From Pavona decussata (lineage: Eukaryota): DNA of 64,000 nucleotides. The stretch lies in contig CDRNST010000213.1 in NCBI GenBank assembly GCA_977016875.1, forward strand, positions 310,001-374,000, given 5' to 3'. Each line of letters begins with the position of its first letter. Position 1 is the first letter of the stretch. Below, piece by piece: positions 14,611-62,776 of this stretch. Under the pieces are notes generated by a model. That model was not told the origin of the DNA. It saw nothing but the letters and a program-made list of their open reading frames with translations, and ran no database searches. The position numbers were made by a program, and so were the translations under genes.

Positions 14611-17600
14611 CTACTCCTCGCTAATCTCAGCTGGTTCCTCTGTAGATTTCACACAGGTTTCATCTGTGGGTCTGATGGTGGGATTTCCGTCGGTTTTTGT
14701 GGCAGTTTTCTCGAACTGATCCACAGCCATCGCATTCCAAGCCGCCAAACACCAAGGACCATAGAGAATATTTAACGATGCTATGGACAGGAAAAATTGG
14801 AGATGTTATTGGTAAACTACCAGAAGGCGTTTAGTTTAGGTTTAGGCTTTTCCGTTAGTGATCGTATTTTCGGCTCCAAATATATTTACCAAATCGACGG
14901 CAGTTTTCTTATGGGCTATATATACTCTTACAGACGATAAAATGACGCCTGCGGCTCGTGGTTCTTCTGTGATAACTTCGCAAGTATAAAAGCTACGACA
15001 ATAAGACTTGGAACATAGATAGTACGCGCGTCCAGACATCATCATCATTATTATTATTATTATTATTGTGTCACTATTTCGAAATGGAGATCCGCTATCT
15101 TAGATTTCTTGATTTCCCAAAACCTCAGAAACCACGAAAATCGACCGAAAAGTAATTAAATCGAAAAAAAAAAAAAGAAAAAAAAGTGATATAAGAACAT
15201 ACAACCAAAACTTTACATTAAAGCAGGACTTTTCCGATTCCTGAAAAACCTGCCTTAAAAAAATTGGTTGCCATTAGTAACACCAAGGTAAGTAAACCCT
15301 GACCTATTATACCAAATTTGTTGCCATTTTTGAAAACGTCTCGTGTCGTTAGCGCAAATAATAAAAAATATATACTTTCGGAGTCGGCGAGGTTGAAATC
15401 CGTAAGACATTTCGTTATAAAAGGGCCATTCTAACTTTCAACTGTCATACAACCGTCAGAGCGTAAACAACTGACAAACAATATGCGTCTTTTTCTACGC
15501 CAGATAAAAATGGCTTAGCCTAAAGAGCAGCAACATTTCGATCTTCTGAATAAAAGCACTTACCCCTGGAATTATCAACAACGAAGGTCTCAAATGCAGG
15601 AAATGCTGAATTTGGACGGCGGGTCAGTAACGGTTTCTGGGTAGAGTTATTGATGCCCATCATGTCATCCACCATCTGAAATGAAGGAATTCAACAGAAT
15701 CCTCTTAAGGGTTATTAAATCTTGTTACCTTAATTGCACGGGTTCACGAGAAACGAAACATCCTGGTTTAGAAGGGACAACAGCCGCCACACTAGGGGTG
15801 AGTTGCATAAAATTTAACTTCGGGCGTAACTGCTAACGCCAGACCTTCAGCCCAGTCACATTCAGTATTTTAACGTCCGACGATAGCATTTACGCCCGAC
15901 GTTAAATTCTATGCAACTCACCCCAGGTGATTTGGTTGAGGAGATCATAAATGTTCTTGCCGAGTGGACAAAGCTAAAGAGGGGGAAGGGGATAGGAAGT
16001 GGGGCGCTGCAGAGTGATACTTTTCAACAAACGTTATCACCACAATTAGAGTGAGCACACAAGTAGTGTGAAAATTGCGCTTTTCGTTAACTTAATTCCC
16101 GCTTCCACCCTTCCTATGTTACTCTCATCTTCTTCCACTTTTGATTCTCCAGAAGACTTCGCTATGTCACAAAAATTGGTCCTTTTGTCCCCATAGTCCT
16201 GTCCCGCTCCTTGTAGACTTCCCGACATCTTGGGAATCCCGCCTACACCTTGCTTTTTACTTTCAGAGTCTTGTCCAGCCCCCACTACCCCTCGTCTTCC
16301 CCCCCCCCCCCCCTCCGCCACAATTCACGCTGTAATTACCGCTATTATTGGAGCCTAAGAATAAGCCTTGGATTTCCGGGTTAGAAAAACAGAACAACAA
16401 TTAGAAGATACATGGATTGTAGTTCTTAGCACTTACAGGTATGGCTCAAGCAGTTGCTTACCATCGGTATACCCAAGTATTTTATTTATACCACATACCT
16501 GTATTATTTCCTTGTCCGAGAGATCAAGAGGTTCAGCCTCTGGAAAACAAAAATAATATCAACAGGGCGGCCGAACGGGTCACTGATACAACCTCACGAT
16601 AAAACTGAGTATAAAAGAACAGTTTTTTGACCCAGAATTATGTTGTTGACACGATGCTCTGTTTTTAGCCATGACACAGCCTTTTTCTAATGATCGATTA
16701 GACTGCAGGCTTGAGGTTACGTTGCTATCGACTGAACTTTGGCGAAAGGTGGCAACTAGCCGTCCAACTGGTAAGCTCAACACGATGACCGATCCATTAC
16801 ACAAAGTCGGTTAAATTACTGTAATTTGATTATTTATAGCTGGTTGTCAGTGACTTCCCAATTTTATTTACATACGCTCTGAGGCTAGTCTATAAAAATA
16901 TTATAGTTCATCACTAAATTTTCCCTTTGCCTGATTGGTTTTAGTTGATCACGTGACGTGATAATGTTCGTCCTTGGAGAGGAACTATCAGCGCTTAGTG
17001 TTTTATCCGGCGAAAATACCCGGATGGATAGGACTCAACGTGGAAAAAATCCTCCGTTTTTGTCTTTCAGTTTATTAAGAAACAGCTTGATTTCATGTGA
17101 TTTTTTATCCTTTAGGTTGTTTATCCATCTCTTTTGTTTCAAATGGTCGCATCAAAGGCGAAATTGGTGAGCTGTAAGTTCGAAATGTCAGTCTCAGTGA
17201 CTAATTTAGTGGTGAACAATAAAAACAATACAGTGTGTCTGTCTTGGGTCATTTGCCCTTTGGAAATTACCTTAAAACTAGCACATAAGAACATCAATTT
17301 CCGCGGGTCAACTATCAACCGATACTCCCTCCCTTTGTTTAGCCAATGAGATTGCGAGTTTGCGGGACGTCCGGCCACCGAGTGATGGATGCTAAATGGC
17401 TTATTACCTCATACGAGCCACGAGTGGACTCAAAGCGGTATTACGCGTTTATATTTCTCAGTGGCCGTGTAGAGAATGTTAGTGACAAGAATATTTTTAC
17501 ATCCACCCCAAATGGACCATTTTTGAATTGCAGTGAGCTTCATTATGAAAGCTACGGCTAAGTGCAAAACTTTTTCATACGGAAATTAGTTTTGTTTCCA

Positions 17601-19272
17601 TATCAATGAAAACTAATTTTCATAATAAAAACTTTGCACTTAGCCTCGCTTTCATAACGAGGTTCAAAGCAACTAGGAAATTTGCTGTTAATTTTAGGGG
17701 TACCCTGAGGGGTACCCGAAGAGGTTCATTTTGATGGATAACTGTTCATTGCATCCGGAATGACTTGGTCGACCTCTGAAATTCGGATTTAGTTGTAAAG
17801 TCGAAACCAGAAATGTTTCGCCGGCAAAATCTCAACCTCAAAATTCCGTGACACTGGAAACTAAGTGTAAGTCCTTTCGTCTTTGGAACGGCAAATATGT
17901 AATTAAATTGTCCAATGAGGCCAGCTAGCATTTTCGAAGAACGAATAGCGCTCGAAAATTTGGGAGGTAAGATTCCTTTCCGTCAAACGTTCAGCAACTA
18001 AAAGTTAATTATATAAAGCACCTGAACAGATCCAATGTGTTACAGTACGCACTGAATATTTCTTTAAAAGTTCACAAAACAGTCTGGGAAGAATGATAAC
18101 AGAATTTTAAGTTTTCGCTTCAATGTTTGTAATTGGTGCCTGATATATGAGCAGAAACATTCAAATGACAAATTAAAACAAGAAGACTGGAATAATAGCT
18201 AACATGATGTATAGGTCAAAAAGGCGCGGTTGGGTGCGGTTGTTCGGCACAAAACACTGATTCAATGCTTAGCTTGCGAATTTTATCGTAAACAACAAAA
18301 TTTACTGAGAAAGCGTATTTTATTTTTGGCTTAAGCTTTACACTGGGACTTTCCCGCTTTCAGTATTCCCTGCTGATCCCGACTAAACAACCACCGCCCA
18401 AGTTAAAAAATATATGGGAAATTTGAGTTCCTAAGATTATTCATTTGGAAACTAAAAATGGCAAAACAGCTGAAAGTTTCAGGAAAAATGTCAAGTTCGT
18501 TGAAAATTTCAACCTAAATAAAATTTTACAACAAAGGACTGGAGTAAAATGTTTACACAGGTGTTCCAGTTTTTCCAAGAAGCGATAACCGGTGAGGTCA
18601 CAAGATTTTGACCACTCTATGAAGTGTCAAAGAATTTTAGTTTTGAAATTGAATTGGTTTTGAAAGAAAGACAAGGATAGGAAGCTGCGAGCGAGTTATT
18701 TTCTTGTCCGGGTAAGGTATTTATATAAAAAAAAGATTACTTTCTTGTGGTCCTGTTAATATCCAATCTTATGAGTTGCCGTGGCATGGGAGAACATCTC
18801 CGTTCAAATGATAATTCAGTTAATTACTGTGCAAACTTTCCGGCATTGCCAGAGCGCGATAATACTTACGTCTACCATGTTCCTTTGTCTTCTCCTCCCT
18901 TGCGACCCTGCTGCGCCTCATGCGATACATCTTGAAAGCCTTTGGTCCGCGGGAACAGCTTTCTTCTTTTATCTCTTTGAAGTCGCGCAGAGCATTCAGC
19001 GTGCATCTAAAATTCGTCTTCCATTTTTTTGGATCCCTCTTGTGCACTCCTTCTATGTATCTCCCAGAGTGAACTGCCCATTGGCGAAAAATTTCGGCAT
19101 CATCACCAACGCTCCATCCATGTCGAGATCCATGCTTCCAAGGAATCTTAAATGATCCCAGCCGTCGGTTGATCCATTCCAATCCCGCAATTTCTTTGCT
19201 GTCTAGTTTCTGTTGAAGCCAGTCTCGAAAACGCAATTTCTTCGTCCCAATGGGTTTGCTGTAGTCGTGCAT
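14611..19272 (-). CDS. IRF: Interferon regulatory factor 'IRF-A' (IRF1/2-related DNA-binding domain, no recognisable SMAD-like IAD1), 241 aa; exons 19272-18870, 16539-16499, 15675-15564, 14780-14611
   Basis: Exon 1 encodes a Trp-pentad IRF DBD (LRFRDWL..LEW..FKIPWKH..HGW..FRQWA.HSGRY..DPKKWKTNFRCTLN). All introns are GT-AG with consistent phases 1, 0, 1, and 403+41+112+170=726 nt ends in TAG. Confidence 0.85.
15795..15924. mobile_element. 130-bp palindromic MITE in IRF-A intron 2
   Basis: ggggtgagttgcataaaatttaacttcgggcgtaa ... ttacgcccgacgttaaattctatgcaactcacccc inverted termini (~40 bp). Confidence 0.75.
17510..17685. mobile_element. Foldback MITE in IRF-A intron 1
   Basis: Inverted arms tatgaaagctacggctaagtgcaaaa / tttgcacttagcctcgctttcata. 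A related fragment lies at ~61595-61625. Confidence 0.55.
18345..18354 (+). promoter_or_regulatory. Canonical NF-kappaB site GGGACTTTCC in IRF-A intron 1
   Basis: Exact match to the Ig-kappa/HIV kappaB decamer, ~0.5 kb into intron 1. Confidence 0.5.
18870..19272 (-). CDS. IRF: IRF-A exon 1: complete IRF DNA-binding domain
   Basis: ORF 18820..19272; donor GTAAGT starts at 18869. Confidence 0.95.
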
Positions 19273-62600: not shown

Positions 62601-62776
62601 TTAAAGCATTCAATAAGCTTAAATATGTGGCAAAGTTGAAGTTGACAAAGTCTTACAAATAATTATTCTTTCAAATTTCCTAAAATTTAAGCTTAAGCTT
62701 ATATATGCTTACCCTCCGACGGTCTTCTCTCCTTACGCGGTATTTTGAACGGGCGATGGAAACCAAGAACGTCCAT
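44657..62776 (-). CDS. TASOR: TASOR/TEX15-family protein (DUF3715 pseudo-PARP + SPOC-like domain + ~2000-aa low-complexity tail), ~2398 aa; exons 62776-62713, 59914-59514, 58305-58156, 57379-57200, 56364-56237, 55110-55019, 53290-53181, 52078-52006, 50655-44657
   Basis: The spliced N-terminus reads FKIPRK..SREAKEI..NPNLERDYHEKKAELREEGRLPKEL..LAF..EICRIGL..LGDGDMGV..PDL..LLVFK|IVKGRVK..LEPTPNHDCHIS..TQ|YYLYEY..KRPRQCLPFAVISL, which follows the TASOR/TEX15 DUF3715 motif order. It continues AWRGLV..SYLDVSRKISLKEL..AGVLC..MFLVP..RMFCIV, which is SPOC-like. Phases 1,0,0,0,2,1,0,1 are consistent and total 7197 nt. Confidence 0.8.
53365..53638. mobile_element. Young Penelope-like insertion: perfect 98-bp inverted repeat with hammerhead core, short tail and 13-bp TSD
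   Basis: Arms 53377-53474 and 53479-53576 with spacer TCTT. Core CTGATGA-A-GGGC-TAA-GCCC-GAAAC at 53485-53508. Direct repeat TCCATCAGTAATA at 53365-53377 and 53626-53638. Confidence 0.85.
59514..59914 (-). CDS. TASOR: TASOR-like exon 2 (DUF3715 core), ending at a GC donor
   Basis: ORF 59502..59954; acceptor cacag| at 59915; donor AAG|GCAAGT at 59513. Confidence 0.85.
60740..61520 (-). mobile_element. Decayed R4/Dong-like RLE non-LTR retrotransposon 3' fragment in TASOR-like coding intron 1
   Basis: Frameshifted minus-strand peptides: LHEQLLPTRMY, CRLCGKAPESV.HILACCPALAQNKY..RHN (CCHC knuckle), SPWYSEVKPKVVYES..AFWDIP, IEMTCP, GYSV.QYNIILDV. Confidence 0.7.

What the first reader, a model, noticed from the sequence alone, without database searches (positions are those of the whole stretch)
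14611..62776. IRF-A / IRF-B / TASOR-like gene cluster: a candidate pre-interferon 'IRF2-HUSH' module
Seen: three consecutive minus-strand genes, a TASOR-family gene followed ~8.4 kb downstream by an IRF2-like gene and then a second IRF, with no intervening gene that I could support. Established: TASOR/TASOR2 scaffold the HUSH complexes that silence retroelements, loss of HUSH triggers innate nucleic-acid sensing, vertebrate IRF2 has been reported to recruit the TASOR2 complex to interferon-stimulated genes, and interferons are vertebrate-restricted. Inference: the linkage may mark an ancient retroelement-silencing/antiviral circuit in a non-bilaterian. It could also be chance adjacency.
Basis: partly seen in the sequence, partly recalled or inferred. 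Interest (0 to 1): 0.85.

Follow-up and report, generated by a model that had tools for sequence, protein, structure and literature searches.

The report
Conserved TASOR-like plus two-IRF gene block
Three real neighbouring coral genes, one from the TASOR/TEX15 transposon-silencing family and two IRF1/2-type immune transcription factors, have kept the same order and direction in several distant corals and in one more distant anthozoan, but nothing yet shows that they work together.

Summary
On the minus strand lie a DUF3715 (TASOR/TEX15 pseudo-PARP) gene (ATG 62776, stop 44657), an IRF gene 8.4 kb downstream (IRF-B, 36214-26103) and a second IRF (IRF-A, from 19272). I found no sign of a gene between them.

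- **Chance adjacency is unlikely.** The 602-Mb genome has one DUF3715 locus and five IRF loci.
- **The trio is conserved.** Two other coral assemblies carry it in the same order and on the same strand, although their giant exon is only 33-34% identical and neutral DNA no longer aligns.
- **The pair is conserved further.** A Tara coral-sample scaffold has TASOR-like then IRF-B. So does an unidentified anthozoan as distant as Nematostella, there 69 kb apart.
- **Limits of the linkage.** Amphioxus has no IRF within 10 kb of its DUF3715 genes. Nematostella is unresolved.

The coral domain falls outside the clade holding vertebrate TASOR and TEX15. Both IRFs are IRF1/2-type, not IRF2 orthologues.

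I found no sign of coupling:
- no ISRE at the TASOR-like promoter;
- conserved non-coding DNA only within 2.7 kb of IRF-B;
- no periphilin domain detected.

Most likely this is an old, retained linkage. The functional module remains an untested hypothesis. The scan noted parts of this stretch before, on this same window.

The parts
62713..62798 (-). TASOR-like exon 1; ATG at 62776; the 5' limit of the exon is not defined
   Evidence: Spliced contigs in X1, X9 and X11 join 62713 to 59914. The sequence shows the ATG and a GT donor. The frame fits exon 2.
59514..59914 (-). TASOR-like exon 2: first half of the DUF3715 pseudo-PARP domain; its donor is GC, not GT
   Evidence: PF12509 E 1.4e-9. TASOR 6TL1 E 1.6e-7. 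Joints on both sides in RNA contigs. 75% identical in L002 and 49% in L018.
58156..58305 (-). TASOR-like exon 3: DUF3715 profile positions 76-115
   Evidence: Pfam. RNA joints. Conserved in L002 and L018.
57199..57379 (-). TASOR-like exon 4
   Evidence: RNA contig piece and joint. Conserved in L002, L011 and L018. Colinear with bilaterian DUF3715 proteins.
56236..56385 (-). TASOR-like conserved coding block (exon 5 region); splice limits not settled
   Evidence: tblastn against L002, L011 and L018. My phase count from exon 4 does not close, so a small exon may be missing.
55020..55124 (-). TASOR-like conserved coding block
   Evidence: Conserved in L001, L002, L011 and L018.
53172..53321 (-). 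TASOR-like conserved coding block
   Evidence: Conserved in L001, L002 and L011.
51995..52081 (-). TASOR-like conserved coding block
   Evidence: Conserved in L001, L002, L003 and L011.
44657..50701 (-). TASOR-like giant last exon. The open frame is 2014 aa, with the acceptor somewhere in 50627-50687. It is largely low-conservation sequence with short conserved motifs; the stop is at 44657-44659.
   Evidence: ORF list. No Pfam match. Relatives are 96% down to 29% identical. Conserved motifs. Runs X1-X4 hold 0.90-0.97 of its words.
36215..44656 (.). Intergenic stretch of 8,442 bp between TASOR-like and IRF-B; no gene found
   Evidence: No coding block conserved with the distant loci. Open frames have no Pfam domain. 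No Rfam match. Conserved non-coding pieces lie only at 38921-38870, 37719-37298 and 36760-36355.
36643..36740 (-). Conserved element upstream of IRF-B with several IRF half-sites (TTTCACTTTT, AACGAAAC..AAAACT)
   Evidence: Alignment of four coral lineages. GAAAACGAAA at 36673-36682.
35801..36214 (-). IRF-B exon 1: ATG and the whole IRF DNA-binding domain
   Evidence: PF00605 E 2.5e-37. Best solved relatives are IRF2 at 150 bits and IRF1 at 137 bits. 88-91% identical in L001 and L002, 78% in L011, 59% in Nematostella.
26103..32799 (-). IRF-B downstream coding blocks: 32799-32653, 30388-30221, 30018-29884, 27897-27814 and 26279-26106, with the stop at 26105-26103
   Evidence: tblastn against L004-L006, L010, L012 and L014. 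The last block ends at a stop in the window and in L006. No Pfam IRF-association domain. Two blocks are also matched in Nematostella L016.
19273..26102 (.). Intergenic stretch of 6.8 kb between IRF-B and IRF-A; no gene found
   Evidence: No conserved coding block. Open frames have no Pfam domain. No Rfam match.
18823..19272 (-). IRF-A exon 1: ATG and the IRF DNA-binding domain. This is the open frame; the donor lies inside it and is not mapped.
   Evidence: PF00605 E 2.9e-36. Best solved relatives are IRF2 at 134 bits and IRF1 at 129 bits. 65-66% identical to the syntenic copies in L012 and L014.
14611..16552 (-).
   Evidence: blastn and tblastn against L014. Translations. The last frame shows no conservation and no RNA was laid on it.

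Best explanation
This is a real head-to-tail block of three genes, inherited from an early anthozoan (at least early hexacoral) ancestor.

The genes:
- **TASOR-like.** It is the genome's only DUF3715 gene. It encodes a pseudo-PARP domain followed by a roughly 2000-aa tail of low conservation that carries short conserved motifs. By inference from vertebrate TASOR and TEX15, it is a chromatin or transposon-silencing scaffold.
- **IRF-B.** It is a slowly evolving IRF1/2-type factor. Conserved IRF-binding sites sit just upstream of it, so it is probably switched by IRFs, possibly including itself.
- **IRF-A.** It is a fast-evolving IRF1/2-type paralogue. It is closer to a third, unlinked IRF than to IRF-B.

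Shown: the genes, their order, transcription and splicing of TASOR-like, and conservation of the arrangement.

Inferred: the adjacency persists mainly by descent, each gene has its own close-range control, and the products do not need each other.
For: - Gene identities.
- Transcription and splicing of TASOR-like in three studies.
- One DUF3715 locus and five IRF loci in 602 Mb.
- Same order and strand in ERZ25071797. The gap from the giant exon to IRF-B is 8.0 kb, and IRF-A-type lies 16.4 kb after the IRF-B ATG.
- Same order and strand in ERZ25067868, with gaps of 6.6 kb and 15.2 kb.
- The Tara scaffold has the pair, 8.3 kb apart.
- An anthozoan as distant as Nematostella has the pair on one contig and one strand, 68.8 kb apart.
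- Conserved non-coding DNA lies only within 2.7 kb upstream of IRF-B and none was found in TASOR-like introns. This fits the short-range regulation reported for anthozoans (PMC10719294).
- No canonical ISRE core at the TASOR-like promoter.
- No IRF next to the amphioxus DUF3715 genes.
- IRF-A is sister to the unlinked C320-type IRF, so the two linked IRFs are not a recent tandem pair.
Against: - Sea anemone genomes are reported to keep macrosynteny but little microsynteny, with three-gene blocks falling off fast (PMC10719294). A trio kept across saturated divergence, and a pair kept to a Nematostella-like distance, is more than that baseline leads one to expect. This hints at some constraint.
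- I could not measure the baseline for these particular genomes, because the flanking genes lay outside every fetched locus.
- The taxa behind the ENA contigs are unnamed, so their depth is judged only from sequence divergence.
- Co-expression was not tested.
Confidence: 0.55

Rival explanations
1. The linkage marks a working circuit in which an IRF1/2-type factor recruits, or is co-regulated with, the DUF3715 scaffold. That would couple retroelement silencing to antiviral transcription, as a forerunner of vertebrate IRF2-HUSH2.
For: - The linkage survives its own refutation test. It is conserved far beyond genus and in constant order and orientation.
- Anthozoan microsynteny is otherwise poor.
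- Human TASOR2 peaks overlap IRF2 peaks by 86%, and loss of TASOR2 de-represses interferon-stimulated genes.
- An abstract reports another anthozoan immune gene pair, CARDIB-RLRb, as a conserved functional linkage.
Against: - No direct evidence of any kind.
- The coral domain is not TASOR2 or TASOR in particular.
- The IRFs predate the IRF1/IRF2 split.
- No periphilin domain was found (inconclusive), and MPP8 could not be searched.
- No ISRE at the TASOR-like promoter.
- No linkage in amphioxus.
- In human cells IRF2 was not recovered with TASOR2 by mass spectrometry, and a bridge through HCFC1 is proposed.
Confidence: 0.1
2. Regulatory entanglement. The genes stay together because control elements of one, most likely IRF-B, lie in or beyond its neighbour, or because they share a chromatin domain. 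The proteins themselves would not cooperate.
For: - Constant order and strand over long divergence.
- Conserved non-coding blocks exist upstream of IRF-B.
Against: - Those blocks end 2.7 kb from the IRF-B ATG. The remaining 5.7 kb of the gap, and the TASOR-like introns that I could compare, hold nothing conserved beyond exons.
- In the distant anthozoan the genes are 69 kb apart.
- No TAD-like structures were seen in Nematostella, and enhancers sit close to their genes.
Confidence: 0.12
3. Chance adjacency confined to this lineage.
For: Any gene has neighbours, and a story can be told for many pairs.
Against: - The expected number of IRF exons this close to the single DUF3715 gene is about 2e-4.
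- The arrangement recurs in four other assemblies at several divergence levels.
Confidence: 0.02

Closest known systems
Human HUSH2 (TASOR2-MPP8-periphilin) at IRF2-bound interferon-stimulated genes (PMC11532391)
   Same: A DUF3715-family scaffold and an IRF1/2-type factor are the two players. Both themes, transposon control and antiviral transcription, are present.
   Different: - In humans the link is co-occupancy of chromatin, not gene adjacency.
[quoted passage not shown]
- IRF2 was not co-purified, and HCFC1 is proposed as the bridge.
- No periphilin domain was found in this genome.
- The coral genes predate the TASOR/TASOR2 and IRF1/IRF2 duplications.
TEX15 (germline, piRNA-linked transposon silencing), and the 'truncated Tex15' label given to cnidarian DUF3715-only genes (bioRxiv 10.64898/2026.09.07.749791)
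   Same: - They share the DUF3715 domain.
- The coral gene has no other Pfam domain, as that preprint reports for 21 of 28 cnidarians.
   Different: - The TEX15-specific domains are absent.
- In my domain tree the coral clade sits with an amphioxus clade. It lies outside the clade that holds both the fish TASOR and the caecilian TEX15. Neither name is earned.
Vertebrate IRF1 and IRF2
   Same: - Both DNA-binding domains score best against IRF2 and IRF1 structures (134-150 bits). IRF4 scores 90-112 bits and IRF3 about 70 bits.
- No IRF-association domain 1 was found in IRF-B.
   Different: The C-terminal parts show no recognisable similarity. IRF-A and IRF-B belong to separate anthozoan lineages, and a third IRF1/2-type gene lies elsewhere in the genome.
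CARDIB-RLRb linkage conserved across Anthozoa (bioRxiv 10.1101/2025.11.22.689925; abstract only)
   Same: It is a conserved neighbour pair of immune-related genes in anthozoans, read as an ancient coupling.
   Different: That pair has functional work behind it, according to its abstract. This block has none.

Membership tests
IRF transcription factors (PF00605) | [quoted passage not shown] | tested here: met
   Both exons match the full profile (1-104 of 105) at E 2.5e-37 and 2.9e-36.
IRF1/IRF2 subgroup | DNA-binding domain closest to IRF1/2, and no IRF-association domain 1 | tested here: met
   - IRF2 and IRF1 structures score highest for both genes.
- No PF10401-type match on four of the five conserved IRF-B blocks at E up to 1; block 27897-27814 was not scanned.
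- For IRF-A only two of its downstream frames were scanned.
IRF2 orthologue | One-to-one descent with vertebrate IRF2 rather than IRF1, and the C-terminal repression region | tested here: inconclusive
   Scores against IRF2 and IRF1 differ by only 5-13 bits. No named vertebrate sequences were at hand for a tree. The C-terminal blocks match nothing known.
DUF3715 / TASOR pseudo-PARP family (PF12509) | Pseudo-PARP domain near the N-terminus of a very long protein | tested here: met
   - Exon 2 scores 38.5 bits against a cut-off of 28.5, and exon 3 continues the profile.
- TASOR 6TL1 matches at E 1.6e-7.
- Exons are colinear with residues 30-415 of bilaterian DUF3715 proteins.
TASOR proper (as opposed to TEX15 or an older branch) | Domain groups with vertebrate TASOR | tested here: not met
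   The coral clade groups with amphioxus P0014. The fish TASOR and the caecilian TEX15 fall together in another clade with SH-aLRT support 99. It is a short-domain tree, so it is only a guide.
TASOR proper | SPOC, DomI, PIN and DomII after the pseudo-PARP domain | not tested
Single exons gave no Pfam match.
HUSH complex | Partners MPP8 and periphilin present and bound | tested here: inconclusive
   The periphilin Lge1 domain (PF11488) gave no match in the own genome at E up to 0.1, searched exon by exon with a 71-position model. MPP8 has no specific model, and I had no sequence for it.
Conserved microsyntenic block | Same genes, order and strand in independent distant lineages | tested here: met
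   - The trio is present in two assemblies.
- The pair is present in two more, one at a Nematostella-like distance.
- The pair is absent in amphioxus.

The most novel reading that the evidence does not exclude
The DUF3715-IRF1/2 linkage is under selection because the two products act together. An IRF1/2-type factor would direct a pseudo-PARP scaffold to immune or retroelement loci in an animal without interferon. The vertebrate IRF2-HUSH2 link would then be the remnant of a circuit that predates the cnidarian-bilaterian split or arose early in Anthozoa.
Probability: 0.08. Interest if true: 0.8.

Novelty: new member of a known kind. Interest (0 to 1): 0.4.

Why it matters
If the adjacency is only inherited, this is an ordinary, well-documented block of known gene families. 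It is useful mainly as a synteny marker in Hexacorallia and as a gene model for the single coral DUF3715 gene.

If the linkage is held by function, it would give a simple, testable entry into how transposon control and antiviral transcription were tied together before interferons. Nematostella could serve for the test if its IRF-B neighbour proves to be the DUF3715 gene. The conserved IRF sites in front of IRF-B are a firmer, smaller result: IRF-on-IRF regulation appears to be old in corals.

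Tried and rejected
- **Nematostella.** The IRF-B orthologue (P0084, DS469535.1) has a 2128-aa gene ending 5.2 kb upstream on the same strand, with large 3' exons. I could not show that it is the DUF3715 gene.
  - No Pfam hit is on record for it or in its open frames.
  - It has no match to a profile of the coral giant exons.
  - It shares none of the short motifs.
  - The upstream DNA was out of reach.
- **Profile search for the domain.** A search with an alignment of anthozoan DUF3715 exons for a named sea anemone fragment returned only its own input sequences.
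- **Annotated cnidarian proteins.** The first homologue search with the giant exon found only unannotated open frames. No annotated cnidarian protein turned up.
- **Periphilin.** The domain search in the own genome gave no match. This is not proof of absence.
- **Naming the taxa.** The Tara sample accession is in no paper held, and run organisms are coded.
- **Earlier notes.** A word search for HUSH partners turned up nothing usable.
- **TASOR-like exon chain.** My phase count after exon 4 does not close at the only acceptor in front of the next conserved block. At least one small exon is probably missing from my model.
- **Joined exons.** SPOC and full-length comparisons were therefore left out.
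- **Protein-protein prediction.** I did not run it, because I do not claim that the proteins bind.
- The N run in L016 (about 6.4-8.8 kb) was left as it is.

Full report
**What is in the window**

Three genes lie head to tail on the minus strand.

The upstream gene starts with the ATG at 62776 in a short first exon. Spliced contigs from three runs in three studies (X1, X9, X11) remove three introns:
- 62712-59915 (GT-AG);
- 59513-58306 (GC-AG);
- 58155-57380 (GT-AG).

The 64 coding bases of exon 1 leave one base that completes the first codon of exon 2.

Exon 2 matches Pfam DUF3715 above the curated cut-off (E 1.4e-9). Exon 3 continues the same profile. The best solved relative is the TASOR pseudo-PARP domain 6TL1 (E 1.6e-7).

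Four more coding blocks are defined by conservation: 56385-56236, 55124-55020, 53321-53172 and 52081-51995. The gene ends in a single open frame of 2014 aa, 50701-44657, with no Pfam match. That tail evolves fast but carries short conserved motifs.

My exon chain is incomplete. The reading phase after exon 4 does not close on the next block, so a small exon is probably missing.

**The two IRF genes**

IRF-B begins 8,442 bp downstream of the TASOR-like stop, with an exon that holds the ATG and the whole IRF domain (36214-35801, E 2.5e-37). Five further conserved coding blocks follow. The last ends at a stop at 26105-26103, both here and in a relative.

IRF-A starts at 19272 (E 2.9e-36). It has conserved blocks at 16552-16488 and 15690-15558. 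Its proposed last frame, ending at 14611, is not verified.

Both domains score best against IRF2 and IRF1 structures, well ahead of IRF4 and IRF3. No IRF-association domain was found in IRF-B. They are IRF1/2-type; I could not show IRF2 orthology.

The genome has five IRF DNA-binding exons. A third IRF1/2-type gene lies on contig C320, and two IRF4-type genes lie elsewhere.

In a tree of the domains, IRF-A groups with the C320 type. IRF-B forms its own clade, which includes a Nematostella protein. The two linked IRFs are therefore not a recent tandem pair. IRF-A evolves much faster, at 65% identity between corals where IRF-B keeps 90%.

**No intervening gene**

I found no gene in either gap.
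- No coding block is conserved with distant relatives there.
- The longer open frames have no Pfam domain.
- The window has no Rfam match.
My single reads call went to the 5' end of the TASOR-like gene.

**Is the adjacency more than chance?**

The 602-Mb genome has a single DUF3715 locus. With five IRF exons, about 2e-4 are expected within 25 kb downstream of a given gene. That figure overstates the case, because the pair was chosen after looking. Conservation is the better test.

**Conservation**

Relatives of the giant exon range from 96% down to 29% identity. I fetched the DNA around them and walked along the contigs.

| Assembly | Arrangement |
|---|---|
| ERZ25071797 | IRF-B starts 8.0 kb after the giant exon; an IRF-A-type exon lies 16.4 kb after the IRF-B ATG |
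| ERZ25067868 | Same trio, with distances of 6.6 kb and 15.2 kb |
| Tara coral-sample scaffold | Giant exon and IRF-B, 8.3 kb apart |

Everything is on one strand and in the same order.

Between the window and these three, only exons and a few blocks just upstream of IRF-B still align. A 71% relative, by contrast, aligns through the intergenic DNA. Neutral sites are therefore saturated and the divergence is large.

A still more distant assembly, ERZ26695794, carries colinear TASOR-like exons 2-6 at 49-67% identity. It also carries an IRF-B-type exon on the same 803-kb contig and the same strand, 68.8 kb downstream. Its IRF domain is 59% identical to the window's and 68% to Nematostella's. It is thus at least as far from the window as a sea anemone is.

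In Nematostella itself, the IRF-B orthologue has a 2128-aa gene ending 5.2 kb upstream on the same strand. I could not identify that gene.

In amphioxus two DUF3715 genes sit in tandem. Their neighbours are RING, BLOC1_2 and C2-domain genes, with no IRF within 10 kb.

The organisms behind the ENA contigs are unnamed. A run label and the Tara record point to corals.

**What the names are worth**

Hits to the coral domain in a library of 1.8 billion proteins include proteins named TASOR, TEX15 and 'TASOR pseudo-PARP domain-containing', at similar E-values.

In a domain tree the coral clade joins an amphioxus clade. The fish TASOR and the caecilian TEX15 fall together elsewhere.

A 2026 preprint finds only the DUF3715 domain in 21 of 28 cnidarian genomes and none in seven others, including three octocorals. 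It files the cnidarian genes as truncated Tex15. The safe name is a DUF3715-family gene that branched before or outside the vertebrate TASOR/TEX15 split.

**Signs of functional coupling**

I found none.
- **ISRE sites.** The ISRE core GAAANNGAAA is enriched in the window, at 20 sites against 8.7 expected, and no shuffle reached 20. The sites cluster around the two IRF genes. None lies at the TASOR-like promoter.
- **IRF-B upstream block.** A block upstream of IRF-B with several IRF half-sites is conserved in four coral lineages. This points to IRF-on-IRF regulation.
- **Conserved non-coding DNA.** It stops 2.7 kb from the IRF-B ATG and is absent from the TASOR-like introns that I could compare.
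- **HUSH partners.** The periphilin domain was not found in the genome, which is inconclusive. MPP8 could not be searched.

**The human premise**

One paper reports that 86% of TASOR2 peaks overlap IRF2 peaks and that loss of TASOR2 raises interferon-stimulated genes. [quoted passage not shown] That domain is the only recognisable part of the coral protein.

**Weighing**

Sea anemones are reported to keep chromosome-scale synteny but little gene order, with control elements close to genes and no TAD-like domains.

This cuts both ways. It makes a kept trio more notable. It also makes long-range regulatory entanglement less likely.

I could not measure how well the flanking genes are kept in these same genomes. 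That measurement is the comparison that would decide between the readings.

**Verdict**

The linkage is old and reproducible.

Noticed in passing
window 56-2824 (+): A plus-strand open frame of 922 aa runs in from the window's start. It is built of 44-aa acidic tandem repeats (132-bp and 321-bp periods) with long glutamate runs, and has no Pfam match. It is the next gene beyond IRF-A, on the opposite strand.
   Followed up: partly
window 2923-4577: A tandem array of a 337-bp unit, 4.9 copies, 73% matches.
   Followed up: no
window 59512-59513: The second intron of the TASOR-like gene uses a GC donor (GC-AG intron). Spliced contigs in two runs support it.
   Followed up: yes
window 57400-58200, 59200-59600, 60200-60600, 61400-61800: Stretches inside TASOR-like introns draw summed contig depths in the thousands to tens of thousands in all four runs, with many loose ends. 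They are high-copy repeats, probably transposons.
   Followed up: no
window 36643-36740: A block upstream of IRF-B with several IRF half-sites is conserved in four coral lineages. GAAANNGAAA is enriched in the window (20 sites against 8.7 expected) and clusters around the two IRF genes.
   Followed up: partly
window 44657-50701: The fast-evolving giant exon keeps short motifs across relatives only 29-34% identical. Examples are GGV(I/V)EMSL.EDWGF, DMEISESLPS, EPE.VVCSP...KTF(T/S)FRFPG and two LTPPPPL(V/I) sites. These are candidate docking motifs.
   Followed up: partly
L004, L005, L006 (ERZ25071797): Three contigs of one assembly, at 41-44x, each carry the giant exon (2134, 1990 and 2136 aa) and an identical IRF-B exon. 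They are haplotypes or several genotypes in one sample.
   Followed up: no
L021 (Branchiostoma belcheri KV411842.1): Two DUF3715 genes (2437 and 2220 aa) lie in tandem on one strand, separated by a RING-finger gene and a BLOC1_2 gene.
   Followed up: no
L003 21582-22037: In the 71% relative, a retroelement-like open frame sits downstream of the giant exon, and no IRF exon lies within 10 kb. An insertion has probably widened the gap there.
   Followed up: no
window 16488-16552: A small IRF-A block conserved in L014 reads EPLDLSDKEIIQ.
   Followed up: partly
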